DNA from: Magallana gigas | Lineage: Eukaryota | Length of the DNA: 64,000 nt | Assembly (NCBI RefSeq): GCF_963853765.1 | Contig: NC_088854.1 | Coordinates: 31,434,001 to 31,498,000, forward strand | Direction: 5' to 3' | Part shown: positions 27,079-51,400 of the stretch, piece by piece | Numbering within the stretch: position 1 is the first letter of the stretch | How the letters are laid out: the number at the start of each line of letters is the position of its first letter | The notes under the pieces: model-generated | Seen by the model: only the letters and a program-made list of their open reading frames with translations | Databases searched by the model: none | Told to the model about the DNA's origin: nothing | Made by a program: the position numbers and the translations under genes

Positions 27079-30000
27079 TTATTTCCTGGGTAAGGCGTTG
27101 AGGACCTCCGCTATTTTTTCGTAGTCAGAGAGTTGGTTGTAGACAGTGGCGGACAGCCTGAGGTAGAGCTGGCCCTGGGCGGGACACACGGCAGTGTTGA
27201 TTCTGTGCTTCCTCATCAGATCTAATATCAATCTCTCGGCTCCTTCCTAAAATAAGATCGAATTTTAAGTATAAACTTACCGGTACATCTATCTTAATTA
27301 TGGTTTTAAAAAATTGTTCAACATATATCCAATTTTTTTTCTTCTGATATCTGACAATTCTTTTATTATGAGAACAACTGAAGATATCTCAACAACTGTT
27401 TAACATGCGTTCTAAAATGTGTTACAAATGAAGGTTTTTATGAGAGGGTTTTCATCCATCTTTGCAAGATGTCAGCAGATACTAAATGTACAGCACAGAC
27501 CTCAAAGCTGTCAGAGGGTGACTTTCGTCATTCATCATCGACTTTCATATTTCCAAATCAATACCGACAAAATTGAGTGCTACCAGGTAGAAATGTCTTC
27601 TGTTTAGCTGTGTTGCAGGAAAACAAAACAGGTGAGTTTCAGTCTCATGCCAAGTATTTCTTACTTACATGTGTTCCAGCTGGATATCCTTCGTATTCTG
27701 GAAGCAAGACTAGTCTCATGTATGGTGCTTCCATCGACTTCGGAATTTCCGGCTTTGGAGTTCCTAGTTTATCCGATATCATTGATGTTACGTTGTCCAA
27801 GAGAGCTTTCGTGTACTGGTGAATCTTCTCCTGCATATGACGGATATATGGTTGTGATAAGATTTGAACTTGAATAACAATTTGCCACCGAAAGTATGTT
27901 TACATATAAGGATAGAGTGAGGGTAAAACGAATGAATAACCCCTAACAGACCTATATGGAACCGAATCCTTAAAAAATACCTTGAATAGTAAGTCATGAA
28001 TCAAAAATGATCTACATGTAGTCAGAACAAGAGAGTTCTAACATGCTTTCTTCTCTCCTGTCGGTAACTTTCACTCAAAAATATTATTTACTGCGTACCA
28101 TAAAAACCAAAACATAATTATTTACCATTCCTCCAATTTCAGAAAAGAACTTTAGCGCCTCTGGGACTAAGAAATATGGTATATTGTCACGAGTTCCTTG
28201 CATAAAGTATTCCAACTGAACGCCTTTTTTGTACATATGTGACGTCACAAGTGGAGTACACCAATCATGGTGTTGTTTAGCAATCCAGAGAATTGCACAC
28301 CCTCGAGGCGTGAACACCCATTTGTGAAAGTTCCCAGTATAGAAATCGGGTTGAAGCTCTTCCAAGTTGATTTCCACTTGCCCTGGAGCATGCGCTCCGT
28401 CTATAAACACCAAGACTCCCCTTTTTCTGCACTCTTCAATCATTTCTCTCAAGGGGAAAACTAATGCTGTCGGGCTGGTAATGTGATCTGCAAGAAAGAT
28501 TCATTTTTTGACGAATAAAAAAAACTAGCATCCAAATTTTACGACAAATATTTATTTAACTAACAAATTGAATCTTTCGTTACCTAAAACAACTAATCGG
28601 ATCTTTGGATGTTTGTCAAGGTGTGACGTCATGCTTTCGACCACTTGTTGTTCGTCCTTAATGGGGAAGCGTATATCGAATTGGTGTATGTGTCCACCTA
28701 AAACGTTCATGCATTGTTTTCTTACTAGTTACAGTAATTTGAGAGAACAAATATTTAAAATGTTTAATGTAAAGAACAATATTCTTGACTAATAGAATCA
28801 TTTGTTGCTGTTAACACGACCTCGTCGCAAACCATGGTTTTGAGTTCACAAGATGTTAATACGGGTTCTGAGCAATTGTCAATGATGTTACAAAATATAT
28901 AATCTGCTCGGAATTAAGATTACTCTAGCTATTTATGAAGCATATTTATTACTAAAACAGCTAGAGAAGAAAATTAAATTTATTATTCAAACCCCAACCC
29001 CCGCCTAAAAAAAATAAAATAGATAAATGTGTTAAACTTTTAGCCGATCGCAGTCGCAATGACAGAAATGTTGGTGACTTTTTCATTAACATGTATACAA
29101 AAATCTCTTGATGGTTAGAAAGAATACAGAGAATAGATTCGCTTTTTTAAATATCAGACCTGTGGAAAATTCTGCCACTTTACGACACGCATTAGCAACA
29201 GCTCTGTATGTATGTACTGTCGTCAAAATCTCGTCTCCATCTCGCCATGGCAAAGCCTTCAGAACACTGTTAACACCTGAAAAACGTATTCATATAATAC
29301 TAGTATTGAGAAACTTCAATCGGAACCATAAGGTACAATTTATGTCTAAGTATACGAAATATATGGTTATTTGGCGACATATCTGACCTGTGGTCGCATT
29401 CTGGACGAACACTAAATTCTCTGGATCCGCGCCCACAAATCTGGCGGCCGCCTCCCTGGCCTGCGTGTACAGCTGGTACTCAGTCTGTCTGTAGAACAGG
29501 TCCGGGTTGTAGTTTAACTCATCATGTAATCTGAAACAATATTCTGTGAATGTATATATATATGATTACAAAATGGTTATTTTTCGTAAGCGTAGCTTAA
29601 GGTAGTACAAAACAGGTAAGCTAAATTTTTCCTATAATTCAATTTTTCTGAAATTTTTATATTTTTTTCTTTGGAATGAAATCTTTTAATACGTAAAATT
29701 TGAAAAAAAATCCGACTTCTCAATTTTTGCCCGCATCGCCCCAAACTTAACATTGGAATATCCTCTCAGTGGAGTGTAAAATGAAATAGTCATTGTTATA
29801 ATTTTCTATGCCATTAAGTTATTTTTCAAGATATTACAAATATTTGTGCTGCTATTTAAACAAGAGACATTCTTGTTACTTAAAAATACTAAAATAAATT
29901 ATAACTGGTAACTTAAGATAATTTCTCATGCAATATAATGTAAAACTAGTGCTTGTGAATACTCTTTTAAGACGAAAATATGCAGCACTTAACGGTATCT

Positions 30001-31364
30001 AAAAAGAAAATGTATAATTCAAATTTGAATAAAATTTAACAGTATGATTGGCATGACCCTGTAATTAAAATATATCAAAATAAAGAAAATTTAACCATTG
30101 GTTTTAGATTAATTAAGGTTTAAGTATGTTTGACGGAGGTATAAATTGATTAAAATCTTAGATGACGTCATCATATTTGACCTTTGACCTGATGATATGA
30201 CCTTGAAATTTGTTTGACATAAAGCTAAAATACTGGTGGTGGCTGTGTCTAAATTTCAGGTCTTCACTATGAAAAGAACACAAATTACGCATTTTTAAAT
30301 GATATAAGGCTAAATTGCATAAGAATCATATGAACACCATCCAAATGTATGTTTCAAAATTATCGAAATACGTTGTATCCTAACTTTATTTGGCCTTGAG
30401 TAATTGATGGGTATGATTTATATTTTTTTCTTAAGATAATGGACTATAATTAATTTTTACATCATATTAAGTCATTATTTTGTGTATTTCTGAAAATATT
30501 TCAAATAGATAATTTCAGGGGTGTTTCGTACTACCTTAAATGATCAAAACACGGTTGCATATTTTGTAGTTTCCGTTATCAACTCTAAACCAGAATTAGC
30601 GCTATCTGAAAAATATAGTTTTATATTTACATATACCGAATACGATTCCCTTTATTTTTACTTACTTTTTTATAATCAATTTATTTATTAGTTAAAAGAG
30701 ACATGTAAATATAAACAATAAAATGCTTTCTTTGATGATTCATGCGGGTTATGAAGGTAGCGATCATTGCAGAAAAATATTCGGGATGTGTATTTTTTCT
30801 GCAATGTCGCCAACTTCATATCCCGAATGAATCACCAAAGAGAACATTTTATTGTTTAAATAAACCTATGATGATTGAATTTTAAAATAGTGGTTATAGG
30901 TTATAAATTATCATTTACAGACAGGAATCTATATTTATCAGCAAATTCTATTGTTAACGTTTATTTGCTTACCAAAAAAATAACCAACTTCGATAAGCAT
31001 TCGTAAACTATAGTTTACAACCGTTAAATATGATTTTTCAGATGAAAACTAATTAAAGTAAACGAATCGTTTCAGTCATATAGTTTTCGGTTTGAAAACT
31101 ATAGTTTATCAACTGTGAAACTATTTTTAGCTTATTTTGGTTATCATGGCGTGCCATAGATTTTTCATGTGTTGGGTTATATGATAACAAGTTCGTAAAG
31201 GCCGATGCCTGAAATATTTGGAGAGTAACCTAATCTTACTGTTTTTGTCTATCTCGTATCTTTATAGGGATCGCCCCATATGATCCATGATTTAAAAAGG
31301 TCACTCCCTCCTCGAAATGAAAGCATTCTTTTTTCATAGCTGCTCCAAATATTGCGTTAGCCAT
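27079..31364 (-). CDS. PLP-dependent class-V aminotransferase-fold C-S lyase (Egt2 hercynylcysteine sulfoxide lyase / L-cysteine desulfhydrase / isopenicillin N epimerase family), 396 aa
   Basis: Exons 31364-31240, 29530-29388, 29276-29160, 28697-28584, 28487-28126, 27830-27669, 27246-27079 (1191 nt, open). Family motifs FLNHGSYG, NATTGVN, DHITSPT, DGAHAPG, GNFHKW (PLP lysine), QGTRD and YLRLSATVYN. Confidence 0.9.
29601..30535. mobile_element. Non-autonomous TTAA-site DNA transposon (Kolobok-like), 935 bp, in the lyase gene intron
   Basis: TTAA|GGTAGTACAAAACA ... TGTTTCGTACTACC|TTAA; TIR 13/14; no ORF. Confidence 0.8.
30726..30845. repeat. Fold-back (long inverted repeat) element; related fragments near 5320 and 44243
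   Basis: Arms TGATTCATGCGGGTTATGAAGGTAGCGATCATTGCAGAAAAATA / TATTTTTTCTGCAATGTCGCCAACTTCATATCCCGAATGAATCA around a short spacer. Confidence 0.7.
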
Positions 31365-31733
31365 GGTCCCTCTTGTCCAGATTTCCTGAAAGGCGCGGAT
31401 CCAAAAGCAAAGGTAACACCTAATCAAAGGCACAATAATCACACAAAGCAGATCTAGATCTACAGCATTTAAAACCTTTTGTTTATAAGGGGCTGTACTG
31501 TGATTGTTTCTTTCTATCTCTAATCCGTGAAGTCGACCGAAACGATATATACATGTATACAATATTAGTATGTAAATTTGTGTTTTTATGTATATTAATT
31601 AATATAGGTTACAGACTAATCCATAATCTTGACAAGCAAATAGAAAAAAAACCCTGAAAGTTCAAAAACCTTATCCCTGGGAGATGGGGGTGGGGGGGGG
31701 GGGGGGGACGGAGGGGTAAGTTGGGTTAGGATC

Positions 31734-31928
31734 ATAGGCGTCGGAACCGGGGGAGGGGGGGGGGGGGCTTACCGGGGGAGGGGGGGCTTAGCCGTCCGCT
31801 GCCGTCACATTTTCGTTCAGGATTTTGGGGGTAACCTTTTTATTTGGGTTTTTCTAATGGTTAGTCTAGCCCCCCCCCCCCCCCACACACACACACACAC
31901 TTTCAATGTGCTTCCCGGCGACGCCACT
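31734..31928. mobile_element. Truncated G/C-tract MITE related to 56582-56931
   Basis: Starts CATAGGCGTCGGAACC and ends CGACGCCACTG, with poly-G and poly-C tracts. No clean TSD. Confidence 0.55.
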
Positions 31929-32355
31929 GAGCGTTGTATTTTAAACTTTAATTTTATTGCGAATTTTTTTTTGTGTTTTTTTTTACTTCAAATTTTAGAG
32001 ATGGAGGGGGAGTGGGAACTGACACCTTCATAATTCAATATTTAGTTGTTATTTATAAGTAATTTTTTTGGAAAATATATATATATGTTATATATGTTGC
32101 GAAAAAAATCCTCCCTATCCCTATCTGTAGCTACGTTTATGTATTTTTTTTTTTAAATGTATTATCGTATTATTTAACCAATACCACCATTTCCTTCTTA
32201 TTTAAAAGTCTGCACTCATTTTTTAGAAAGACCTATGCAAGTTGTTTTCAAAACTGAAAAATGAGTTTCGTCCCTCCTAGTTTACAAATAATTATTGATC
32301 TTCGAATGATTAGTATCGATGCAGAAAAAATGTATATTATCTTTGTTTTACAGTA

Positions 32356-32713
32356 CAGGCACGTAGCATCGTTTTTGAAAGTGGGGGGCCAGACTCATCC
32401 AAAAATTCTTGACAAGCAAAAAAAAAAAAAAAAAAAAATTAAATAAGACTTTCCCAAAAATCTTCAAAATCCTAATCCGGGGGGGGGGGGGGGGGGGGGG
32501 GGGGGGCTGGCATAGTATATAACTTCAATTTCAATCCTAATTTCCTTATTCTCATATCAATTTTTTACATCCTCAAAAAAAGTGGGGGGCCAACTCCATG
32601 ATAATTCAATTTTTTATGTGTCAATTTAAAAAAATTAGTTGATGTGAGAAAAAGTGGGGGGCCAGGCCCCCCCTGGCCCCCCCCCCCCCCCCCCCCCTGA
32701 TGCTACGTGCCTG
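32356..32713. mobile_element. G/C-tract MITE with 5-bp TSD
   Basis: Perfect 15-bp TIR CAGGCACGTAGCATC / GATGCTACGTGCCTG, flanked by CAGTA on both sides. Confidence 0.85.
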
Positions 32714-33399
32714 CAGTATCTAATTTTTTATTTGCAAATGATGGTCCATAAAACTATGCAAAATGGCTAACTATCCCTTTTCCGGAAATAAAAATCATAT
32801 TGACACAGTTTTAAGTTTTAGCGAGCTTTGTTTACTTCCTCTTTGAATTGCTGATAAACTAACCAAGTTGATCATGTTACTTTAAAATAGCTGATAATTT
32901 TATGGTAATCAAATAGATGAACAATTTTTCAGCTGATTATCATAAACATAGATAGAGTGTTCATGTTGAATATCAGGTAACAGTTTTTGTAACGAGTACA
33001 AGTACTTGTGGCGAACTTGTGCTGGATTTGACTTAACAGTTAACTATAGAATAGGCCTCTATAGGTTTTTTTTATTTGTTTGAGTTTTTTGGGGGGTGCA
33101 TTAATTTTGAAGTATTTTGTAGATTTTTATATATATTCACGTTAAGAAAGAATAATCTTACAGTGACCAGGCTACGCTCAGGTCACAGTAAGAATTTGTC
33201 TTATACACTTGCAATGTAGCAGCCGCGAAGCGGATGATCTTCGCGTCGATTTTAAGTCCGTTAAAAATAATCTGCAGAGGAAAAACACATTTTAATACAT
33301 TACAAACCTTTTTGGACATGCATATGTAGTTTAGTCCACAAAATATCCATTTAATGCGTCGTACCAAGGCATTTTGTTAAACTACGCGTTTGAATTTAC

Positions 33400-33460
33400 C
33401 TGCCATTTTGTCGGAAATTGCACTCGGAATGTCTTGGATTTTATCGTTAACATGGCGACC
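33400..33460. promoter_or_regulatory. Putative compact bidirectional promoter shared by the lyase and AASDHPPT
   Basis: Back-to-back YY1-like motifs: CAAAATGGC on the minus strand (ATG 33406) and AACATGGCG on the plus strand (ATG 33452). Each is followed by a consensus donor (after 33400 on minus, after 33560 on plus) leading to non-coding exons. Confidence 0.55.
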
Positions 33461-33790
33461 ATAATAGCGAATTTTCAAATGTGATGATAAAAGTTGCAGC
33501 GATTTCGTTGCAAAAACAGTTTATGTGGTAATATGGGATTATAAAAAAGAAACATTGCAGGTATTTGAGACCAATCATGAAAATTTAGGCGAGATACAGT
33601 GCGATATAATTTTTTTATTTGCTACGAAGCGAGTATATGGGACAAATTCTATCGTTAAACCGGGTCCGTAGGACATCTGTCATTTTAACGAAAGAACATT
33701 CTATCTAATTCACGTTATAAACACATATAATTATCATGAGATATTTCACTTGTAGCGTACTTGAACAGAACTGTATAGCTTCTCGAGAAA

Positions 33791-36151
33791 ATGATAAAAT
33801 GGGCTTTCAGTTTCCGAACTTGGCAGCCAACAAGATCGGAGTGGATGTTTTGTGGCCAGTGTATACAGAGTGAAGAAAAAGACCGAATTCAGAGATTTGT
33901 TTTTAAGAAAGATGCAAAAGCAGCCATGGTAGGTCCAATATTAAAAAAAAAAATTAATTAAACAATGATGTCAAAATTCATGCAAGAACTTTTTCAGTCA
34001 TGGAAGGTCTATTATGAATAAAGATTGAATTAAATAATGATGTCAAAATTCTTGCAAGAACTTTTTCATTTGAAATTTTAAGATTGGACGGCTGTTGATT
34101 CGAAAAGCAATTGCAGATTGCTTACACATACCATGTACAGAAATCAAATTAGGAAGAACAGAAAGGGGCAAACCTTTCCTTGAAAATTCAGGACAGGAAG
34201 ACTTTAGTTTTAATGTTTCTCACCATGGAGACTATGCAGTTCTGGCAGCCACTAAAGATGGATTGGTTGGTGTGGATGTCATGAAGTATGAAGTCAGTAG
34301 GTATAAAGAAAAACTAAATGCTACATACATTTGTTGACACAATCTCTTTAGTATCTGCTTAATATGTTCAAGACAACAGTCATTGGTCTTTAATCATTGT
34401 TCTTCAATTTTGCAGAAACTTCTGTACCAAATTTTTTCCATACTATGAGGCGCCAGTTCACTGATTCTGAATGGATTCAGATACGGAAATCAGCGAAGGA
34501 AAGTGAGCAGCTGAAAACATTCTACAGACTCTGGGTAGTATTGCATTTTATTTTAAGCTTTGAAATGCTTAGCATGGAATTTGCCATGGGTACTACCAAT
34601 AGTAGTTTATTTTTTTCATTTCATGGGAATTCAATCTATGCATAAGAATTTTTCAAACATACTATTTGGTAACATTTCAAAGATAGTTTTTTAAATTTAA
34701 TATGGCCCAGTTTATATAAATGTATTTCCAGATTAAGGCTATAATTATCAAGTGATACCTGCATTTTCGAACATGTCATCACTACTATTAGCTTGTAGTG
34801 CAGTATTTTTCACAGTTCTACTTATTTCTGTTACTACACGTATGTTATTTCTGTTCCTATGAACATAAATTGTAACACTTTGTTACTTGAGAAGGCAATT
34901 ATATACAAGATTACATGACTATTTCATTCATTGACAAGTTATTTCATTGTCATCTACTTCAGTGTCTTAAAGAGAGTTATGTGAAAGCTCTTGGAACAGG
35001 AATAGGATACGATTTAAGTAAACTGAACTTTGAATTCAAAATGGACTTTTTGCAAGAAAACAAAGTAACAACAGATACAAAGTTGAGAGTGTATGAAGAG
35101 GATCTTTCAGAATGGACTTTTGAAGAACATTCTCTTGACAACCATTGTATTGTAGTGGCAAAGAATCAAAAGGTGGGTCAAAAGCATAATGTAAGCAAAA
35201 TTTGGTCTATCTAAATACCAGTCTATCAAAGAATTTAATTGTCAATAGACACTTTGGGTGCTTTCCATTAAACCTGCATTGCTGCCACTTGATAGATTTT
35301 CTGGTGGTGCCTTTATCGCTGATTGATGGAAGGTGCATTGCCAGCTGGTGATTATGGCAACACATTTTACCATTGCATATCAGGAAACAATATGGCAATA
35401 AGTTTTCCTATTCTACAAAACGGGGATTTCTGTAACTCTGATTTGTCCTATTACATTGAACTACATTATAACTTCAAGTAGCCTTCATTTCAAGATAAGT
35501 ATTAGTTTTAAGCTGCAATGTTGAAATCATTTATGTTGAAGTATTGTGACATTGCCAACCGTACCATTAACGACATCTCTCTGGATGACTTAGCCAGTTA
35601 AGCAACATTAATGGAAAGCGCCCTTATTTAATTAAACAGAGCTTGTGCCATGCTTTGTTTACATCAGTTCAATATACCGTTAAAAGCTCTTTTTCAAGCT
35701 GAGTTTCTGTCTGCTTATTTATTGTTAACATAACAGTTTCCAGTGTTTGCCACATTCAGTTTAGATCTAAACTAGGAATTTTTTTTCAAAATGTAAACAA
35801 AACATGACCTGAGCTTTGTTTATAAAAACAAAGAATTGTGAACCCTCTATTACGCTTATAACTTGACAACTGCCACTCAAATTTAGTTGACTACTTAGTA
35901 TTAGATGCCCTTTTTATCTGACTATATTAACTAAGCCTAAAAAAATTTAGCATAACATTTTTTTTTCTGTGTTTCAGACTCAATCATCCAGTGGAAACGA
36001 AACAAATGATAACCCTTGTAGTTTTAAACTCTTATCATTAGAGGACTTATTAGAAAAAGCCTCACCAATAAGTGACCCTGATGAAAGATTCTGGGAAAAC
36101 TTTCACCTTAAAGATGAGGCACCTCAGATTAAACAGAAAAATAGTGAATAA
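33791..36151 (+). CDS. AASDHPPT: L-aminoadipate-semialdehyde dehydrogenase-phosphopantetheinyl transferase (Sfp-type PPTase), 284 aa
   Basis: Exons 33791-33928, 34083-34296, 34416-34534, 34963-35172, 35978-36151 (855 nt). Motifs KWAF, RTERGKP, FNVSHHGDY, VGVDVM and WCLKESYVKALGTG. Confidence 0.93.
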
Positions 36152-36663: not shown

Positions 36664-39242
36664 TTAATTCACGTTTAAGAAGTAGGCCCAATATACAACA
36701 TTAAACGTTATGAAAAGAAAAGGGTAGACAACTCTAAATATATTCTGTAATTTTCCGTGTTGGATTTTACAACAAGAATTTTCATCACCTTCTTCAGTTC
36801 CAGAATTCTCCTGCAACAAAAACATCGTTTGTTAGCTTTTAGAATACATGTAGTCTTATGGATGTTACAGACCTACATTTAATCAACAAGTAAAAAATTA
36901 GGACGATGTGATTTGTGTACCTTATATTTGTTTTTGGACTTATCCTTCCTCCGTTTCATGTTATGAACAACAGCGAAGACACACAGAGCCATAATGGTGA
37001 ATAGCATGCATACTGCAATCCAAATGTCAATGGCCAACACCCCCTCTAGTCCATTTCCTAGAGAAACCACGCCCACCAGTTGTGTTACTATGGTGAGAAC
37101 ACCTAACACGCCCAGACTGGTGCGCGCGCCGACTTGAGCCTTGTCAATCCACATACTCATCCATCCCAAGATGACGATGAACAAGCTAGGGACGTAGATA
37201 CGTAATATGTATTGGCTGAAATCCCTCACTATCCCCACATTGTATTTTAAACAGGGGTACTCTTCTGAAGAAAAAAAATCACAGATACGTGAGATACCTT
37301 ATTTGATTATTCACCGTATTTGATTATTCAATCTTATAAATCTGAGATATTCAATTGCAAGACATTAAGGCACCTATCCAATAATTACGTGCTGGGTCTG
37401 TGCAGCTGCCTTCTTTTATATTTGTTACACTTGAACTACTGGCGGAAAACGGGTGCTTGTATCTAAAAGGGTTCTGTTGGTCCCAAACCATGCTCATCTC
37501 CGATGCTGAATAGGTGTCTGAAACGTAACGTATTATATTTTAATGCTTTAAAACTTGAATCATTGTAAAATACCTATTACAAATTCAATTGATTATCAAT
37601 GTAATCGATAGGCATATTGAAACTTACAACTTTCAATTGTAATTTCGCAAGACTGAGAACCACGTGGAAAACCTTGTGACGTCAGAGGGCATGGTGTTCG
37701 AACTGTCAGTCTAAAAGAAAATATTGTATGTCATATAATGAGGTCAAAATCAAAATGATTTATGCATTTGGTATTCTATATTATTTTCAGGAAAAGGAAA
37801 CTTGTCTGTCACCTTGTACTTTTGACTAAAGTTCCGTTAGGATAGATGCGTATGAATACATTGGGTTTGGTTACGCTGTGCTGAACTTCAGATATGGCGT
37901 TGCTGATGTAACTATCGGGCGTCCATATCGTGGCGTATTTATCCTGGTCCACCAAAACGTATTTCCCCGCAAAAATGATGGAGCTGGCGTCGTACTGTAG
38001 ACGAACGTCCTCCCATTGCTGAATCAAATGAAATGACGTGGCAAGCTCCTAATTTTGGGAGAAAAGTCATATTCATATCTTTGCCTAAAGCTTTGTGGCT
38101 AAAAAGCAAAAGTTATCAAATATTCTATTGTTGTATTATGGACTTTTTTCATTGTGCTTTCAATTTATTACCATGCAGGTACTTGCATATTGATAAAAGG
38201 GTAAATATACCTGTAGATTTTAAACTGACTTCAATAATGCAATCATTTTAGAACATTGTATGCCTCAAAGTTTGAAAAAGTCCGATGAAATAAACAAAAA
38301 GACACATGTATATAAGTTAAAATTATGAGAAACGTACAATGTATTTATAAGTTTTTACAAATTTAAAGCCTAATTTATTGCAATATAAATATACTTTTTG
38401 ATCATCTGGGAACAATCGGGAATTGCTACAGGCTCGATATCGGTATATCGAGTGAAATGGAGATGCGCGAGCTGGTTAAATTTAAAAATGGCGTACATGT
38501 AAGCAAAGAAAAAAGGATTTGACCCTGATGGTCGAAAGATGACTGAACAAGGGTGGTCCCAGAGAAGAGGTGGGGTAGGATTAACTAATCAGCCACGGAG
38601 CTTGCTTACCGTAAGGGTTGCAGACTGGATGTAGGTGAATAGAAGCTGGGTCCTGACCTGTGTAACTTGACCTGAAAATGATGAAAGAAAAGTTCTACAC
38701 TTGAGATTTTTCTGTGTCAAACTCAAACGTACGCAGAACAAGAATTATCAGTTATTTTGATCAAGAAAAATTCGCTTTTGAATTTTAAAACTTCATCATT
38801 CGATATACATGTATCTAACACGTTTAAATTTGATTTTAAGGTATTTATGGGTTTTTTTTAAAACCCTTTGTAATAAGTGTATATTTATATTTTAGGTCAG
38901 TCTCAGTCTTCATCTACATCTTAGATATTTCTTGATCATCTTTTATTTCGCTATGCATCAGAACTATGATGGGGGAAAATTAGGTAGTGATCATGTCCAT
39001 CTAGTTACCTGTGTGTATCCAAGGAGGTAGATCATAGTCAACGCGAGACAAGTTTGCTTCTAGTTGGTCCCAACTTTTAAAAAAAAGATTAACATACATG
39101 CACCTATGTATCCATAGAAAAGTGTTTAAATTGCATGATATTCAAATTCGAAAATAAGCGAAGCGTTTTACCTTGGCAAAGCAGCGAGAATTCCGACCAC
39201 TGTGGAGAAAATAGAACAAGCTAGGTATAAAGAAATGGGCAT
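36664..39242 (-). CDS. Orphan Cys-loop (pentameric ligand-gated) channel subunit A, GlyR/GluCl-like clade, 378 aa
   Basis: Exons 39242-39172, 39073-39009, 38671-38610, 38048-37813, 37710-37628, 37517-37389, 37264-36921, 36810-36664 (1137 nt, open). Signal peptide, QWEDVRL, IWTPDSY, Cys-loop CPLTSQGFPRGSQSC, loop-C cysteine pair, M1 YVPSLFIVILGWMSMWI, M2 GARTSLGV, M4 FRVVYPFLFITFNVVYW. Confidence 0.92.
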
Positions 39243-39673
39243 GATGGCGGGTGTTGTCTGCTTATATGAATAAACCCCTTCTGCAAAACCAGTATTTAAA
39301 GGTCATTCAAGTTGAAACCAATCGCGGTGCCTCAATTGTTCATTTCTATTTCGAAATTCTTCTGCAAATTTTTTCCTTAAATATTTATCAATGAACTTTG
39401 CGGATTTTTGCTTTTTAAATCAATTAAGTTTTTAACACAACACGAAGTTGGAGGTTTTTTTTCGGCGTCTGCTGTGAAGGTGTTTAATTAAGTCGCTTCA
39501 TTTGGTGGTATTTGATATCATGTGAAGAGAACGTTGGTGTCTGACAATTTTAAATGATTGTAGATAAACTGAGACCGTCATGCTCACTTCACTTGAAAAC
39601 AAAACAAAAACATTCCCAGCATGACGGAATGATCGAAACCTTGAAAAATGATCAACGGCTATTCAAAGGCATG

Positions 39674-39698
39674 CTCTCTCTCTCTCTCTCTCTCTCTC
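39674..39698. repeat. Short (CT)n microsatellite between the channel genes
   Basis: About 12 CT units. Confidence 0.9.
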
Positions 39699-40486
39699 GA
39701 TCTCTCGAAACAACATTGGCAGGGTACGGCCGTCACTAATAACATGCTACCGTCGCTTAACACACCGTATTTTGACCAATTTAGACACAATTTTATTGAA
39801 GGCTTCAGATCACATGTCTTGGTCGGTTTGCTCCCTCCCTCTTTCCCTCCCCCCTTCTTAATCGCTAAAATCTATTTATTACAAATCTCAAATCTTTTGA
39901 CAGTACACATATCTGGTGTCGTAAGAAACAGACGTGGTTTAGGATATACAAGTACTGTTATTATCTAACGTTCTTTGGATCGGAATTTTTAGAGATACTA
40001 TTCCAGGAATAAAAGAACATCTACATGTACTCTTACAAACAGTGAAATCGATATTAGCACTATGTGCATGTTGGTGATAAACTACTAGTACTTAGGGGTG
40101 AATAATTATTTTCAAAACTTTTTATGTTCTCTACTAAAGAGTAAAGAACAATATGGTCCTTTTTTTAAACAATCATTAAGATACAATACAGATGAATTAA
40201 TTTACATATGAAATTTATGCAGAGCAAATGGAAAATAATACAAATGCAAATGGAAAATTAAAGAATAAAAATTGATTAATTGAAATATTAAGTCGACGCA
40301 AGAAACCCTATTCAAAAGGCCAAGCAATCTGATGGAACCATAATCCGTGAATTTAGGTTTCTTTGGAACTTTGAAATTAATACATCCTCTAATACATGCA
40401 CACAAACAATTAAATACTATATTGAATCTTTTAAAAATTTATAGATCAATTGTCTTTTCCTTCCATATCGCGCAAAAACTGTAGCA

Positions 40487-43400
40487 TTAGTCAATGTTTA
40501 TGAAATAGGCCCAATATCCAATGTTGAATGATATGAATAAGAATGGGTAGACAACTCTGAATATGTTCTGTAATTTTCCGTGTTGGATTTGGCAGCAAGG
40601 ACGCTCATCGCCTTCTACAGCCTCAGAGTTCTCCTGCAAAAGAGAGCATTCTTTAAAAAAGCAAGAGGCCCATGGGTCTTCATGGTCACCAAATGTTTAA
40701 ATAAATAGAAAGAAAGCTGGACACTATTAAACTTACATGTAAAATTGAGCGATTTAATGTTTAATTAAATAGATAGACCTGGAATTAGACAATAAACTTT
40801 TTTTGGGATGTAATAGAGGAACAAAGTCGTTTTAGTCCACTTACAATTTTCATAGTGGGTATGAAGGTGTTTTAAAAATTAAATCAATTAAATTTTTCAG
40901 GTTTTTATTACATTGAAAGTGATACTATAGGCACCATCCCATCATGATCTGTTCAACCCTTCAACACATTTCGATTACAGCTGCATTGTTACACATATTA
41001 AACAAAAGAAATACAAAAAAGATAGAAAAATTGAATAAAAACGTTTTTTTTAAATCGGGTTGGTGCATTTTAAAGAGGTTCGTTCCTCTGTTTTTGGGAA
41101 GCCATTTTGGGTCACCTCTTTTCTAGAAATTATGCATCATATATTGATTCTACTCATTAATTCAAATTTTATAATGCCAATTAAACTATCTTAAATAAAA
41201 CAGTAATGGAAAAATAAACATTTACAGAGTTTAGTATGGGACTATATTTTGTGGCGGAGGGTTTTTAAGAAGACAATGCACATTTTTCATAACTCAGTTG
41301 TTTAAGAGTACCGCCATTTTAGCTTCCTTATTTTCAGTCCAAACAAAATTTTCAAATAGTTTGCGCATTAGAATATCATATCTTCATTTTGTTACAAAAA
41401 ACATAATTTTACAATTTTTCAGTATTTCTATCGACCTATATTGGCAAATTTAACTTATATGTCAAGGGAAAATGAATCCCAATTTTTGCCTAAAATCAGC
41501 TTATTTCATGCCATACCGGTATCTCAAATTTTACATAATAGACCCCTACTTTTTGTTTTATTTTTCTGACAAGTTTATCATAATTTGAGAAAAAGTTTGA
41601 CACTTTTAAATAATTTCCTTACATGTTGAATTGGTAATAGATAAAAATAGCGTTTGATCAGTGCAAAAAGGTCAAAATATCAATTAGCTGAAGAAATTGT
41701 AACATTTTTCTTCATGATAATTTTATTTTTATTTATTTGGTGCCATGGTTCATTCTGTTAATAAAATATAGAGGGAAAAGCGATTTATGTGTAGTCTGCA
41801 CTTTCAGTACAGAAAGGTCATATTAAATACACCGTAGCGCCAAATGAAGCATATAGATCCCAAATGTTTGTTTTGAATTTTGGTTAAGCTCTGTGTGTAG
41901 ATTTTTAAAAAATACTTTGGGAAAAAAAACTTTAAGACTTTTGATCGCAGGATCCAACGTCCTTAAGGCATCGTCGCAAAACCTCGACCGTGATTTGAGA
42001 CGATGATTTTAAAGCAAATGTAATCACAGTTTTCGCCTAACTATGAAATTGAAAAGTTGGGCTTAAAAATCACTCGGCACTTGTTCTTCTATTTCTCTAA
42101 AAATTAAGAGATCTGATAATGGTTAAATCTAAGCAACACAGATACAATCCTAAATCTCAGACATCAAAAATCTATATTGAAAACGACTGTTACCTCCGTA
42201 GGACACTTAATTAAATGCTCTGTTTTTCCTGGGGGGTTTTAAATGTTCATATGTCATGTATATGTAAAGTGAATTGCTTAGTAAAACGGTTGCGTACGAT
42301 GATTCATTAATTATAACTGGGGTCGACAAGCAATAGGGTTTTTTTGTACCTGATATTTGCTTTTGGCCTTATCTCTTCTCCTTTTCATGTTATGAACAAC
42401 AGCAAAGACACAAAGTGCCATAATGGTGAATAGCATGCATACTGCAATCCAAATGTCAATGGCCAGCACCCCGTCTAGTCCGTTTCCAATAGAAACCACG
42501 CCCACTAGTTGTGTCACTATGGAGAGAACACATAATACGCCCAGACTGGTGCGCGCGCCGACTTGAGCCTTGTCAATCCACATACTCAGCCATCCCAAGA
42601 TGACGATGAACAAGCTAGGGACGTAGATACGTAATATGTATTGGCTGAAGTCCCTCACTATTCCGACATCGTATTTTAAACAGGGGTACTCATCTGAAGA
42701 AAAAAAATGATATTTTTATGTTGTCTTTATTAATATGTCGTATGCATTTCTGGGACAAAGCCATAGAAATGTAATTACTTGTTGTGTCTTTACAGCTGTT
42801 CTGTTTTATATTTGTAACACTTAACCCTCTGGTAGAAAACTCGCCCTTGTAACGAAAAGGACTCGTCTGGTCCCAAGTCATACTTATTTCTGTTGATGAA
42901 TAGGTATCTGAAAAGTATGTTGTATGTCAATTATAAACAAAAACTACGTGTTAATGTCGATTTTCAAGTGAAGAGTTTTGTTTTAACATTGAATTGGTGT
43001 TTTGGAATATCTGTTTAAAGAAAGTCTTACAACTTTCGACTGTAACTTCGCAAGATTGAGAACCACGGGGAAAACCTTGTGACGTCAGAGGGCATGGCGT
43101 ATTAACAGTCAGTCTGTAAATTTATCATTTATCACATGAACATTGTTAAAGCTAGACTAAGTATTTATGAAACTGTAAATCAATGTCAGCTAGGAGAGTA
43201 AGCATGTAATACATTTGTCTCCAACCTTGTACTTTTGACTAAAGTTCCGTTAGGATAGACGCGTATGAATACATTGGGTTTGGTTACGCTGTGCTGAACT
43301 TCAGATATGGCGTTGCTGATGTAGCTATCTGGCGTCCATATCATCACGTATTTGTCTAGGTCCAGCAAAACGTATTTCCCCGCGAAATTCAGGGAACTGG

Positions 43401-48486: not shown

Positions 48487-51400
48487 CTACTGCTGCTGAA
48501 TTTCAGTGAACACCTGCTCCCCTTCGGCTGGCTGGGCTTGGTCAGGCTGCTGCATGATGTACTGCACAGTTCCGTCCTGGTCAACAATGGCGTGGGTCGC
48601 GTTCTCGGTCCCATCGGCACTCTGTACGATGATGATGGTCTCCTGGCCAGCATCATTCTGTAGCGTGGTCAGGGCCTGTCCAGACAGGATCTGGGACGGG
48701 TCACTCACAACAGCTGTGTGGTAGTCCCCTTCTGCTCCAGCCACTGTCACATAGGTCTGTCCTTCAGCAATCTGTTCATGAATGCAAAACATGTTTTGTG
48801 TATATGTGTACAGTTAACAAATTTAATATTTAGATACAAGCAAAAAAGATTTATGAGAATATATCAAGGATTCAATTATTCATTCTAACAAAAAAGTTGA
48901 CATTTCGTGAAATTGGCTGAAAGGAAATTACCTCTCCTTCCTGTTCTTCTTCCTCCTCTTCTTCAGAATCGTCCAAGAGATCATCTTCCTCTACTTCTTC
49001 AGTCAGCTCAAACTTCCTGATGATGGCCTGAGCCGCCTCGCCAGCAGTGACATGGATGCGGCCTATGTGTTCCAGAAGCATCTTCTTCCTCTTGAATGTC
49101 TCGTGGCACATATCACACTGGTAGGGCGACAGCTTCTTGTGAACCAGCTGAATGTGGGACATAAGGTTGGACTTGTTGTTGAAGCATCTGCCACAGTCTC
49201 CACACTTGTGTGGCTTTTCTCCAGTGTGGATTAACATGTGGCGATCCACATGATATTTCTTAGTGAATCTTTTTTCACACACTGAGCAGATAAAGATTTT
49301 TTGATTGGGTGATTTCCAGCCTTCGTGGACTCTCTTAGTGTGTCCTATCAGTGCTCCAAGGGTCTTGAATGCAGCCTTGCAAGTAGTGCAGAGATACTGC
49401 CTTGTGTGAAGATGCATTCCTTTTAAATGCGTATTCAGGTTTCCTCTGAACGCAGAAGCATAGTCACAATGAGGGCATTTGTAGGGCTTACGTCCAGAGT
49501 GGACAGTTCTCATGTGCGAACTCATTCCTGTCTTGAGCACCACCTTTCCACAGATTGGACATGGAATTTGCATTCTGTTTTGCTGGTGAAGCTCCATATG
49601 CCTCTTGATGTTCTTGGCCACTTTGCCACATTCAGGGCACTGCTCTCCTTCTTCCACAGAGCCTTGGACTGAAACTCTCATGATCTTTTCTCTCCACTTG
49701 GCATTTCTCATCTCCTCTTCATAATCAGTCTCATCTTTGTGTTTCCCCTTAATGTGTTTTACCAATCCAATAAAAGCTTTGTCACAGAAAGGACAATTAA
49801 GGGCTTCCTCTGTATTCCGTATACCTCTTCTTTTGTTCTCCATTTCTTCGAACAACCCTACATCCTCTTCCCTTTTCCCTCTCCTCTTCTTTGGGGAATC
49901 AAAATCTTCATCAATACTTGTCTCCATATCTTGAGCTATGGGACCTATCTTTTTCTTCTTCAGTTTAGGATCTGTTTGTGTCAAGACCGATCGTTTACCA
50001 GGAGATTCCTCAATCAATTCAACTTCTACAAAATTTGTTTGAGTGCCTTGAGAGTCTTTTGCTGATCCAGGCTGTGCGGTCATGATGTTGTCAATGTCAA
50101 TTTGATCGAAGTCATAGACATCACCAGTTTGAAGAGAACTTTGGTTGGGATCTTTTAACAAAGAACTCTTGGAAGTGGATGGCCCTGCTTCAGACTGCTC
50201 GAATTTAATAGAAGCAACATTTGGTCCAGTGGAGGCATCAGATGTAGTAGTTTCAGTTGTCTGCCCTTTCTGTTTCTTCGCAGGAGTGGGTGCGTCATCA
50301 GTTGTGGTTTCCTGAGATTCAGTGTCATCATCTCCTCTGCTGCGTTTTTTAGATAATGTGGCAGTGACAGTTGGTGTTCTTTTGGGAGTTTTTTCTTCAG
50401 TGTCTACTTTTCTTGGTCTTCCTCTTCCTTTAGGAGTTTTATCATCTGCAGACTTTGGGGGTCTGCCTCTCCTTTTCTTTGTTTCCTCAAACTCCTCCTC
50501 TTCTTCTTCATCTTCACTTAGTTCAATTGGTACATCATCCACTTCCATTTCTAAATCTTCATCTTTGTATGTACTCTGGTTCTTTTTTCCTCTGCCACGT
50601 CTCTTAGTTTCACTGCTGGGAGTTTCTGGCTCCTCTTTCATGGTTTTTCTTGTTATTTTTGGAGTAGATTCAACATCGCTGTCAGTTTGCTTTTTGGGAC
50701 GACCTCTTCCACGTTTGGCAGACTTAGGTTCCTCATTTTCAACCTCCTCTTCCTCTTCATCAACAGTTTCTTTAGCTTGTCTTTTGGGTCTACCTCTTCC
50801 CTTCCTAACTGGCTCTTCATCTCCTTGAGCCTTCTTCTTAGGTCTTCCTCTACCTTTCTTTACAGGTTCTTCTTTTTCTATCTCTTCATCATCTTCAACC
50901 ATTTCTTCTTCCTCTTCTACCTCCTCCTCCTGCTCTTCTTCTTCATCCTCCTCTTCCTCCTCTTGAACTTGCTTCTTTGGTCTTCCTCTACCACGCCTTC
51001 CAGATTTTACAACAGGTGTGGTTTCCTCCACTTCTGATTGATTTTTCTTGGGTCTACCTCTACCTTTTGATGGGGTTACTTCATCTGTGCTGTCTTCAAC
51101 AGTTGTATCTTTTAGAGAAGACTTGCGTCCTCTCTTTTTTGGTTCAGATTCATTCAAAACTGGAGTGGATTTACTCTCCTTTGGAGGTCTTCCACGCCCT
51201 CTAGATTTGGGTTCAGGTGTCTCTGAAACAGATGTATCTTTATCAGACTCCGCGGCAGTAGACCTCCTACCTCTTCCTCTGGTTGGCTGCTCAATTTCCT
51301 GAACACCTTCATCAGAACTTTGTTGCTCCTCCTCCACCTCTTCAATATTTTGATTTCCTTTTCCACTACGCTTGGGGTAAGACTTGGTGGGTGCTTCTAC

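What the first reader, a model, noticed from the sequence alone, without database searches (positions are those of the whole stretch)
27079..31364. Intron-containing animal Egt2-type C-S lyase: candidate for the missing ovothiol (OvoB-equivalent) step
Seen: an intact 396-aa, 7-exon gene with all the family motifs (LNHGSYG, DHITS, DGAHA, NFHKW with the PLP lysine, GTRD). Established: fungal Egt2 cleaves hercynylcysteine sulfoxide in ergothioneine synthesis, and the plant relative LCD makes H2S. Animals are not known to make ergothioneine, but many marine invertebrates including bivalves carry OvoA and make ovothiol. To my knowledge the animal enzyme that cleaves the 5-histidylcysteine sulfoxide (bacterial OvoB) has not been generally identified. 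Inference: this lyase is a chemically apt candidate; cysteine desulfhydration/H2S production is the alternative.
Basis: partly seen in the sequence, partly recalled or inferred. Interest (0 to 1): 0.72.

Follow-up and report, generated by a model that had tools for sequence, protein, structure and literature searches.

The report
Oyster Egt2-like PLP lyase gene
This is a real, expressed oyster gene for a vitamin-B6-dependent carbon-sulfur lyase related to the fungal ergothioneine enzyme Egt2; it is a reasonable but unproven candidate for the still-unidentified enzyme that completes ovothiol synthesis in animals.

Summary
Window 27079-31364 (minus strand) carries a 7-exon, 396-aa gene. All introns are GT-AG, all five motifs are present, and all six junctions appear in transcript contigs from three studies. 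The protein is a class-V PLP enzyme, 75% identical to a Crassostrea virginica protein that RefSeq names "hercynylcysteine sulfoxide lyase-like". A confident model of that orthologue matches fungal LolT and Egt2 best (TM 0.87-0.90, 27% identity).

The animal proteins form one clade, from sponges to amphioxus. PLP-binding and cysteine-binding residues are conserved. The Egt2 parts that hold the imidazole are not: a loop is 16 residues shorter, Gln224 is His, and Phe304 varies.

This genome has OvoA but shows no EgtD and no bacterial-type OvoB. The papers read say OvoB is unknown in animals outside Hydrozoa. The family was seen in 10 of 15 OvoA-positive species in a published table and in 0 of 12 OvoA-negative ones, but that reflects only about two independent losses.

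Points against a dedicated role: five paralogues here, functionally diverse relatives, and a bacterial OvoB described as broad-specificity.

Verdict: known kind of gene. The ovothiol role is plausible (about 0.35), apparently unpublished, and directly testable.

The parts
31240..31364 (-). Coding exon 1: ATG at 31364, residues 1-41 plus 2 nt. It contains LNHGSYG (31295-31275).
   Evidence: The junction 31240/29530 is in contigs of runs X1, X2 and X5.
29388..29530 (-). Coding exon 2. It holds Arg56, the equivalent of N. crassa Egt2 Arg75.
29160..29276 (-). Coding exon 3. It holds Tyr113, the equivalent of Egt2 Tyr134, which stacks on PLP.
28584..28697 (-). Coding exon 4.
28126..28487 (-). Coding exon 5, the catalytic core. 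It carries DHITS, DGAHA (Asp196, His199), NFHKW with the PLP lysine Lys222 (28323-28321), His250 and GTRD (Thr265).
   Evidence: Pfam Aminotran_5 at 2e-10. PDB phmmer gives LolT 6e-21 and Egt2 2e-18.
27669..27830 (-). Coding exon 6.
27079..27246 (-). Coding exon 7, with Arg371 (equivalent of Egt2 Arg438, which binds the substrate carboxylate) and the TAA stop at 27081-27079.
31365..31528 (-). 5' untranslated region, at least as far as the X1 transcript contig reaches. It has no in-frame ATG upstream within it.
   Evidence: record 1 covers 31240-31528.
27067..27083 (-). AATAAA signal (27083-27078) overlapping the stop codon, followed by a very short 3' end. Contigs stop at 27067-27069.
   Evidence: Contigs cannot prove an RNA end.

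Best explanation
The gene encodes a cytosolic, probably dimeric, PLP-dependent carbon-sulfur beta-lyase of the class-V Egt2/LCD/CefD subfamily. Inferred mechanism: Lys222 holds PLP as an internal aldimine. The alpha-amino group of a cysteine-derived substrate displaces it. Arg371 binds the substrate's alpha-carboxylate, and Tyr113 stacks on the cofactor. The alpha-proton is removed and the sulfur substituent leaves by beta-elimination, giving aminoacrylate, which breaks down to pyruvate and ammonia. The most specific plausible substrate is S-(5-histidyl)-L-cysteine sulfoxide made by the oyster's own OvoA. Cleavage would release 5-thiohistidine (via its sulfenic acid, reduced by cellular thiols), which the OvoA methyltransferase domain converts to ovothiol A. 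The enzyme would then be a non-homologous replacement for bacterial OvoB. Shown here: the gene, its expression, its fold, its catalytic residues, and the genome and phyletic context. Inferred: lyase chemistry, and above all the substrate. I put about 0.75 on 'beta-C-S lyase acting on a cysteine derivative'. I put about 0.35 on the family being the main animal ovothiol lyase. The figure is lower for this paralogue alone.
For: The gene model and splicing are confirmed. The AlphaFold model of the 75%-identical orthologue P0173 has pLDDT 95.3. Its best solved matches are LolT and N. crassa Egt2, TM 0.87-0.90. Egt2 functional residues are listed in PMC10805701. In the alignment and the counts, these are conserved: Lys247, His246, Asn244, Asp221, Tyr134, Ser196, Thr107, Thr307, Arg438 and Arg75. 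Arg75 is kept in 52 of 61 animal sequences against 8 of 25 bacterial ones. No conserved persulfide-carrier cysteine exists, so this is not a NifS/SufS-type desulfurase. The genome has OvoA on C7. EgtD was not detected. No PatB/OvoB-type lyase was detected, and the best hit of that search is an alanine aminotransferase. The papers read say OvoB is unidentified in metazoans and kinetoplastids. The animal proteins form one clade that broadly follows animal phylogeny (SH-aLRT 94). The family was seen in 10 of 15 OvoA-positive and 0 of 12 OvoA-negative species of Table 1 in PMC4768315.
Against: There are no biochemical, genetic or co-expression data. Identity to Egt2 is only 27%, and an equally close structure, LolT, is a Mannich cyclase. 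The Egt2 features that contact the imidazole half differ. The loop between the His276 and Thr307 equivalents is 15-16 residues instead of 31. Gln224 is His in all 92 aligned sequences, including bacteria. Phe304 is variable. His276 is kept in only 29 of 61 animals. Cys156 is absent. So the animal clade resembles the general family more than it resembles Egt2. The oyster has five copies and other animals have several, while only one OvoA sulfoxide-synthase locus was detected here. Bacterial OvoB is called a broad-specificity beta-lyase (PMC12631010), so a generalist lyase could fill the step. The phyletic match rests on about two independent losses, and the hit lists are lossy. In Capitella larvae the orthologue marks protonephridia.
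Confidence: 0.38

Rival explanations
1. It is a general cysteine, cystine or cysteine-S-conjugate beta-lyase (desulfhydrase). It would make H2S, persulfide or thiols for sulfur metabolism or detoxification, as proposed for plant LCD and shown for cyanobacterial C-DES, with no dedicated role in ovothiol synthesis.
For: RefSeq names many orthologues 'L-cysteine desulfhydrase'. C-DES cystine lyase is the next-best fold after Egt2 and LolT (TM 0.79). The active-site signature (DGAH, short loop) is shared with the large bacterial and early-fungal family. There are lineage-specific expansions and tandem double-domain forms. The Capitella orthologue is expressed in the protonephridial (excretory) cell cluster. 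Freshwater taxa (Ephydatia, Potamilus) and a priapulid keep the family.
Against: It does not explain why the family tracks OvoA so closely across animals and is missing from vertebrates, insects and nematodes, which still need sulfur metabolism. The names are automatic transfers, not assays. Arg75 is conserved in animals as in Egt2 but in only a third of the bacterial sequences.
Confidence: 0.37
2. It catalyses other PLP chemistry on a non-sulfur or non-lyase substrate, such as epimerisation (CefD-like), C-C bond formation (LolT-like), desulfination or transamination.
For: LolT is the top structural hit. JGI names the bacterial relatives isopenicillin-N epimerase. The subfamily is functionally diverse.
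Against: The residues Egt2 uses for beta-elimination on a cysteinyl moiety (Tyr134, Ser196, Arg438, Arg75) are all kept. Animals have no known penicillin or loline pathways (my knowledge).
Confidence: 0.15
3. It is the true Egt2 of an animal ergothioneine pathway.
For: RefSeq uses 'hercynylcysteine sulfoxide lyase(-like)' for orthologues in C. virginica, Haliotis, Pecten, Lingula and Styela.
Against: No EgtD histidine methyltransferase was detected in this genome. The only sulfoxide synthase found matches the OvoA model. The hercynine-contacting loop and residues of Egt2 are not conserved.
Confidence: 0.04

Closest known systems
Neurospora crassa Egt2 (hercynylcysteine sulfoxide lyase; PDB 5UTS, 5V12, 5V1X)
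   Same: Class-V PLP fold, TM 0.88-0.90 to the model of the orthologue. phmmer E-value is 7e-40. These residues are conserved: Lys247, His246, Asn244, Asp221, Tyr134, Ser196, Thr107, Thr307, Arg438 and Arg75. The reaction it performs is the 2-thio counterpart of the proposed one.
   Different: Identity is only 27%. A 16-residue deletion lies in the 268-297 loop that touches the histidine part. Other differences are Gln224 to His, Phe48 to Tyr, Phe304 to Met and Cys156 to Gln. The partner Egt1/EgtD is absent from the genome. The oyster protein is about 100 residues shorter.
Bacterial OvoB (Erwinia tasmaniensis; PDB 5Z0Q)
   Same: It catalyses the step proposed here, PLP-dependent beta-elimination on 5-histidylcysteine sulfoxide (PMC8433421).
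   Different: It never appears among the PDB hits of the oyster-type protein. By my knowledge it belongs to the class I/II MalY/PatB-like aminotransferases. The oyster genome has no convincing PatB-type gene. Any shared function would be analogy, not homology.
LolT, PLP-dependent Mannich cyclase of loline biosynthesis (PDB 8DL5, 9AZA)
   Same: It is the best sequence and fold match (E 3e-40, TM 0.87-0.88), with the same DGAH and HKW motifs.
   Different: It catalyses C-C bond formation in a fungal alkaloid pathway with no animal counterpart.
Synechocystis C-DES L-cystine C-S lyase (PDB 1ELQ)
   Same: A class-V lyase without a persulfide cysteine. It is the next-best fold (TM 0.77-0.79; E 1.6e-20).
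   Different: Identity is about 20%. Its substrate is cystine.
Plant L-cysteine desulfhydrase LCD and bacterial CefD-like 'isopenicillin-N epimerase' proteins
   Same: Same subfamily. They are the source of the automatic names given to many animal orthologues and bacterial relatives.
   Different: No sequence of a characterised LCD or CefD was available here to place on the tree. The bacterial clade is separated from the animal-plus-protist clade (SH-aLRT 97).

Membership tests
Class-V PLP-dependent enzymes (Pfam PF00266 Aminotran_5) | Significant match to the family profile | tested here: met
   Exon 5 alone scores 2.1e-10, 40.6 bits against a cut-off of 21.5. The orthologue P0173 scores 7.9e-32.
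Class-V PLP-dependent enzymes (Pfam PF00266 Aminotran_5) | Schiff-base lysine and the aspartate that pairs with the pyridine nitrogen | tested here: met
   Lys222 in NFHKW and Asp196 in DGAHA align with Egt2 Lys247 and Asp221. Both are invariant in 92 aligned sequences, apart from one gap.
Egt2 (hercynylcysteine sulfoxide lyase) in the strict sense | Same fold and catalytic set (Lys247, Tyr134, Arg438, Ser196) | tested here: met
   TM 0.88-0.90 to 5UTS, 5V12 and 5V1X. The residues are conserved.
Egt2 (hercynylcysteine sulfoxide lyase) in the strict sense | Elements that bind the histidine/hercynine half: loop 268-297, Phe48, His276, Phe304 (PMC10805701) | tested here: not met
   The loop is 16 residues shorter. 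Phe48 is Tyr and Phe304 is Met. His276 is present here but in only 29 of 61 animal sequences.
Egt2 (hercynylcysteine sulfoxide lyase) in the strict sense | Pathway partner that makes hercynine (EgtD, or the Egt1 methyltransferase part) in the same genome | tested here: not met
   TIGR03438 gave no match in the 564-Mb genome. That search works exon by exon, so its sensitivity is limited.
Egt2 (hercynylcysteine sulfoxide lyase) in the strict sense | Cleaves hercynylcysteine sulfoxide to ergothioneine | not testable with these tools
   This needs an enzyme assay.
OvoB (ovothiol beta-lyase, bacterial type) | Homology to E. tasmaniensis OvoB | tested here: not met
   5Z0Q is absent from the PDB hits. 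The protein is class V. The genome search with the PatB C-S lyase model gave only weak hits, the best of them an alanine aminotransferase.
OvoB (ovothiol beta-lyase, bacterial type) | Cleaves 5-histidylcysteine sulfoxide to 5-thiohistidine (functional equivalence) | not testable with these tools
   Only context is available: OvoA present, no other dedicated lyase known, matching phyletic spread.
NifS/IscS/SufS cysteine desulfurases | Conserved catalytic cysteine on the loop before the C-terminal arginine, to carry the persulfide | tested here: not met
   Cys362 of the oyster protein is shared by only 2 of 61 animal sequences. NCBIfam desulfurase models score 50-80 bits against cut-offs of 475-660.
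EgtE (mycobacterial ergothioneine lyase, TIGR04343) | Score over the family cut-off | tested here: not met
   57 bits against a cut-off of 400 for P0173.

The most novel reading that the evidence does not exclude
The animal-wide clade of Egt2-like class-V lyases, to which this oyster gene belongs, is the long-missing ovothiol C-S lyase of metazoans. It would be unrelated to bacterial OvoB. Opisthokonts would then pair their thiohistidine sulfoxide synthases (Egt1 in fungi, OvoA in animals) with the same lyase family, and the family would have been lost together with OvoA in most ecdysozoans and in bony vertebrates.
Probability: 0.33. Interest if true: 0.75.

Novelty: new member of a known kind. 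Interest (0 to 1): 0.55.

Why it matters
Ovothiols are major redox buffers in the eggs and tissues of marine invertebrates. Yet the papers read here say that only OvoA is known in animals. The lyase step is described as unidentified in metazoans outside Hydrozoa and elusive in kinetoplastids.

Named orthologues exist in the classic ovothiol organisms: sea urchins, mussels and oysters. That turns the gap into a direct experiment.

If confirmed, the animal pathway would be complete, which would allow ovothiol production from animal genes alone. It would also be a clear case of non-orthologous enzyme displacement between bacteria and animals. If refuted, the family remains a widespread, uncharacterised sulfur-metabolism enzyme of marine animals.

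Tried and rejected
1. An upstream coding extension. Contigs of X2 and X5 jump from 31412 to 33756. That is the plus-strand splice of the neighbouring phosphopantetheinyl-transferase gene, merged by unstranded assembly. It is not a lyase exon.

2. Gene neighbourhood. Contigs carrying near relatives (P0234, P0223, P0144, P0136, P0063) are compact eukaryote genomes with no informative neighbours. A cyanobacterial one (P0240) has no OvoA, EgtB or EgtD nearby.

3. Rosetta-stone fusions. Ten long relatives were scanned. None is fused to a sulfoxide synthase. The fusions found were to GGACT, DTW and LMW phosphatase, plus probable mis-joined gene models.

4. A bacterial-type OvoB in the oyster. Only weak hits were found, and the best is an intronless alanine aminotransferase 2 copy.

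5. Earlier scan notes returned nothing.

6. Literature searches for the animal enzyme under its three automatic names found no functional study. Two of these searches were badly framed and swamped by common words. Irani 2018 and Gerdol 2019 are not held.

7. Absence claims drawn from the word-search lists were dropped. Nematostella was missed by all three word searches and surfaced only in the cluster look-up.

8. The '719-aa open frame' reported for the OvoA locus is not real.

10. The spliced 396-aa protein has no reference, so the fold and PDB searches used exon references or the 75%-identical orthologue P0173.
Full report
THE OBSERVATION

On the minus strand, seven exons join with canonical GT..AG introns into a 1191-nt reading frame. 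The exons are 31364-31240, 29530-29388, 29276-29160, 28697-28584, 28487-28126, 27830-27669 and 27246-27079. The frame encodes 396 residues and ends in TAA.

All five quoted motifs are present: LNHGSYG (24-30), DHITS (167-171), DGAHA (196-200), NFHKW (219-223) and GTRD (264-267). The lysine of NFHKW is Lys222, codon 28323-28321.

The model does not rest on sequence alone. Logan transcript contigs from three runs of three different studies carry all six junctions. One 1370-nt contig covers most of the mRNA, from 27067 to 31528. About 27-32% of the stretch's sampled words are held by the 14 RNA or probable-RNA runs listed, which fits the exon fraction.

Two contigs appeared to add an upstream exon at 33756. 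That join is a plus-strand donor at 31413 and a plus-strand acceptor at 33756. Both belong to the neighbouring, divergently transcribed phosphopantetheinyl-transferase gene. The ATG at 31364 therefore stands.

WHAT THE PROTEIN IS

Exon 5 alone matches Pfam Aminotran_5 (2e-10). Against solved structures, its best sequence matches are fungal LolT (6e-21) and N. crassa Egt2 (2e-18).

I therefore ran the exhaustive representative search with exon 5 to obtain full-length relatives. The word search can only see proteins of similar length to the query, so it could not do this from a single exon.

The closest full-length relative is P0173, a 397-aa Crassostrea virginica protein. It is 75% identical over the whole length, and UniRef/nr carry it as 'Hercynylcysteine sulfoxide lyase-like isoform X3'. 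It is closer to the window gene than to the paralogues elsewhere in this genome, so it is the likely orthologue.

An AlphaFold model of P0173, built on a 40-sequence alignment, is confident (pLDDT 95.3, pTM 0.93). Foldseek ranks LolT (8DL5, 9AZA) and Egt2 (5UTS, 5V12, 5V1X) first, with TM 0.87-0.90 at 25-28% identity. The cystine lyase C-DES follows at TM 0.77-0.79, then the SufS-type desulfurases.

NCBIfam models for SufS, IscS, EgtE and the like all fall far below their cut-offs.

ACTIVE SITE

PMC10805701 lists the functional residues of N. crassa Egt2. I mapped them through the phmmer alignment of P0173 to 5UTS. In that alignment the chain index equals native numbering plus 7, which I checked at Lys247 and Tyr134.

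The oyster protein keeps these:
- the Schiff-base lysine (Lys222);
- His246 and Asn244;
- Asp221 (Asp196);
- Tyr134 (Tyr113);
- Ser196 (Ser171);
- Ala106 and Thr107;
- Thr307 (Thr265);
- the carboxylate-binding Arg438 (Arg371);
- Arg75 (Arg56);
- His276 (His250).

It differs at Gln224 (His199), Phe48 (Tyr29), Phe304 (Met262) and Cys156 (Gln134). It also lacks 16 residues of the 268-297 loop, which in Egt2 touches the histidine half of the substrate.

Column counts over 61 animal, 6 early-fungal and 25 bacterial relatives put this in context:
- His at the Gln224 position and the short loop are universal in the family. The Egt2 state is therefore the derived one.
- Arg75 is kept in 52 of 61 animal sequences but only 8 of 25 bacterial ones.
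- His276 is kept in 29 of 61 animals.
- The Phe304 position is variable.

No conserved cysteine sits where desulfurases carry the persulfide.

My reading is a beta-eliminating lyase with an intact site for a cysteinyl moiety, and a distal pocket that is not Egt2's.

EVOLUTION AND DISTRIBUTION

Names attached to the hits place the family in many animal groups:
- sponges (Amphimedon, Ephydatia, Oscarella);
- anthozoans (Nematostella, Actinia);
- a priapulid and a brachiopod;
- annelids;
- many bivalves and gastropods, and a chiton;
- all five echinoderm classes, including Strongylocentrotus purpuratus and Lytechinus;
- hemichordates, amphioxus and tunicates.

In an IQ-TREE analysis, 33 named animal sequences fall on one side of a branch (SH-aLRT 94). 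Their order broadly follows animal phylogeny. Their sister group is ten unnamed sequences. They are separated from early-diverging fungi and from a bacterial clade that JGI labels 'isopenicillin-N epimerase' (SH-aLRT 97). A larger FastTree gives the same picture. Three of those sister sequences lie on compact eukaryote contigs.

So this is an old, vertically inherited animal gene. It is neither a contaminant nor a recent transfer.

The family is prone to duplication:
- This genome has four further copies in tandem on C5:4.90-4.95 Mb (55-73% identity by exon), plus a distant class-V gene on C6.
- Diadema, Haliotis, Mytilus and Glandiceps each have several copies.
- Scallops encode 755-806-aa proteins with two lyase domains.

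THE OVOTHIOL QUESTION

PMC8433421 states that no OvoB-like sequence was found in metazoans except the hydrozoan OvoB-OvoA fusion. PMC8623360 repeats this. A 2023 preprint calls OvoB elusive in kinetoplastids.

In the library searched, the only paper that names 'hercynylcysteine sulfoxide lyase' in an animal is a Capitella single-cell study, where it marks protonephridia. No paper combines 'cysteine desulfhydrase' and ovothiol in an animal context. The proposal therefore appears to be unpublished.

The oyster genome fits the proposal:
- The OvoA sulfoxide-synthase model matches nine exons on C7:31917470-31922410, summing to roughly 445 bits.
- SAM-binding motifs follow just downstream.
- EgtD gives no match.
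- A PatB-type C-S lyase model finds only weak hits, and the best is an intronless alanine aminotransferase.

I compared my hits with Table 1 of PMC4768315. The lyase family turned up in 10 of the 15 OvoA-positive species that have genome accessions: Amphimedon, Nematostella, Capitella, Lottia, Crassostrea, Aplysia, Lingula, S. purpuratus, Saccoglossus and Branchiostoma floridae. It turned up in none of the 12 OvoA-negative species (C. elegans, Drosophila, bony fishes, tetrapods). Fisher's exact test gives p = 0.0004.

This looks strong but is weak evidence, for three reasons:
- The negatives reflect about two ancestral losses.
- Many genes share the pattern of being kept in marine invertebrates and lost in ecdysozoan and vertebrate models.
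- My positives come from capped, lossy lists. Nematostella was missed by all three word searches and found only in the cluster look-up.

The five unseen positives (Trichoplax, Biomphalaria, Octopus, Ciona, Callorhinchus) are therefore open, not absent.

WEIGHING THE EVIDENCE

For the ovothiol role:
- a real enzymatic gap;
- a chemically apt enzyme, whose best-characterised relative performs the isomeric reaction;
- an intact cysteinyl-binding catalytic core;
- OvoA present, with no competing dedicated lyase and no ergothioneine pathway;
- a matching phyletic spread.

Against a dedicated role:
- 27% identity to Egt2, with an equally close relative (LolT) doing unrelated chemistry;
- non-conservation of exactly the Egt2 parts that read the imidazole;
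- multi-copy status against a single detected OvoA synthase locus;
- the description of bacterial OvoB as a broad-specificity lyase, which means a generalist could serve;
- no expression or biochemical link.

My estimates are as follows:
- about 0.75 that the protein is a beta-C-S lyase acting on a cysteine derivative;
- about 0.35 that the family supplies the animal ovothiol lyase;
- about 0.37 that it is a general cysteine, cystine or S-conjugate lyase;
- about 0.15 for other PLP chemistry;
- about 0.04 for a true ergothioneine role.

The first two functional readings are not exclusive.

NOVELTY AND VERDICT

The gene is a new member of a known kind. Orthologues already sit in RefSeq under automatic names. 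It is not a member of Egt2 in the strict sense, because two defining features failed the test. It is not homologous to OvoB.

The value of the finding is the hypothesis, which is specific, apparently new and cheap to test. Interest: 0.55.

Noticed in passing
window 31413 and 33756-35175 (+ strand): A divergent neighbour gene encodes an AASDHPPT-like 4'-phosphopantetheinyl transferase (MIKWAFSFRTWQPTRSEW...). Its non-coding first exon ends at a donor at 31413, inside the lyase's 5' UTR and near exon 1. The two mRNAs therefore overlap head to head, and unstranded Logan contigs fuse them.
   Followed up: partly
window 29588-31063 (intron 1 of the lyase): Repeat-like sequence in intron 1 has very high summed depth in RNA contigs (up to about 1900 at 30572-30899), many variants and loose ends. 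It includes a palindromic stretch around 30720-30850. It is probably a multi-copy mobile element (MITE-like) that is transcribed elsewhere.
   Followed up: no
window 27067-27083: The AATAAA signal overlaps the TAA stop codon, and transcript contigs stop 10-12 nt after the stop. This suggests an unusually short 3' UTR.
   Followed up: no
G000:C5:4903800-4947300 (loci L018-L020, L023-L025): Four tandem plus-strand paralogues of the lyase lie here, at 55-73% identity by exon. Two of them have incomplete or rearranged 5' exons in the tblastn picture. Scallops instead carry two fused lyase domains in one 755-806-aa protein (P0001, P0161).
   Followed up: partly
G000:C6:23659111-23660581 (L031, L032) and G000:C7:31916500-31917050 (L022:6523-7042): The best matches to the OvoA C-terminal methyltransferase model (TIGR04345, summing to about 197 bits) are on C6. 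That is far from the OvoA synthase exons on C7, and no synthase exons lie nearby on C6. C7 has its own, more divergent SAM-motif exons downstream of the synthase. The oyster may therefore have a stand-alone OvoA-Cterm-like methyltransferase in addition to OvoA.
   Followed up: partly
G000:C4:13396317-13397762 (L029:1153-2598): An intronless 481-aa ORF is strongly similar to alanine aminotransferase 2 (PDB 3IHJ, E 4e-193). It is possibly a retrogene.
   Followed up: partly
P0128 / L035:8001-12065: In a fungus-like eukaryote assembly (GCA_021432655.1), a 1041-aa gene model joins a gamma-glutamyl cyclotransferase (GGACT) domain to a class-V lyase of this family. If the fusion is real, it recalls the removal of glutamate before C-S cleavage in gamma-glutamylcysteine-conjugate pathways. 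It could also be a fused gene model.
   Followed up: partly
window 6185-23464 (+), 36879-42658 (-), 48872-51751 (-), 59491-59859 (-): Other genes in the window: laminin-chain exons (N-terminal domain, EGF-like region, coiled coil); two tandem exons encoding near-identical transmembrane regions that look like Cys-loop receptor channels; a 959-aa AT-hook and C2H2 zinc-finger ORF; and a MAPEG/MGST-like exon. None is related to thiohistidine metabolism. These readings come from ORF translations only.
   Followed up: no
window 31660-31900: Long G and C homopolymer runs and a CA repeat lie just upstream of the lyase 5' end, in the shared region between the two divergent genes.
   Followed up: no
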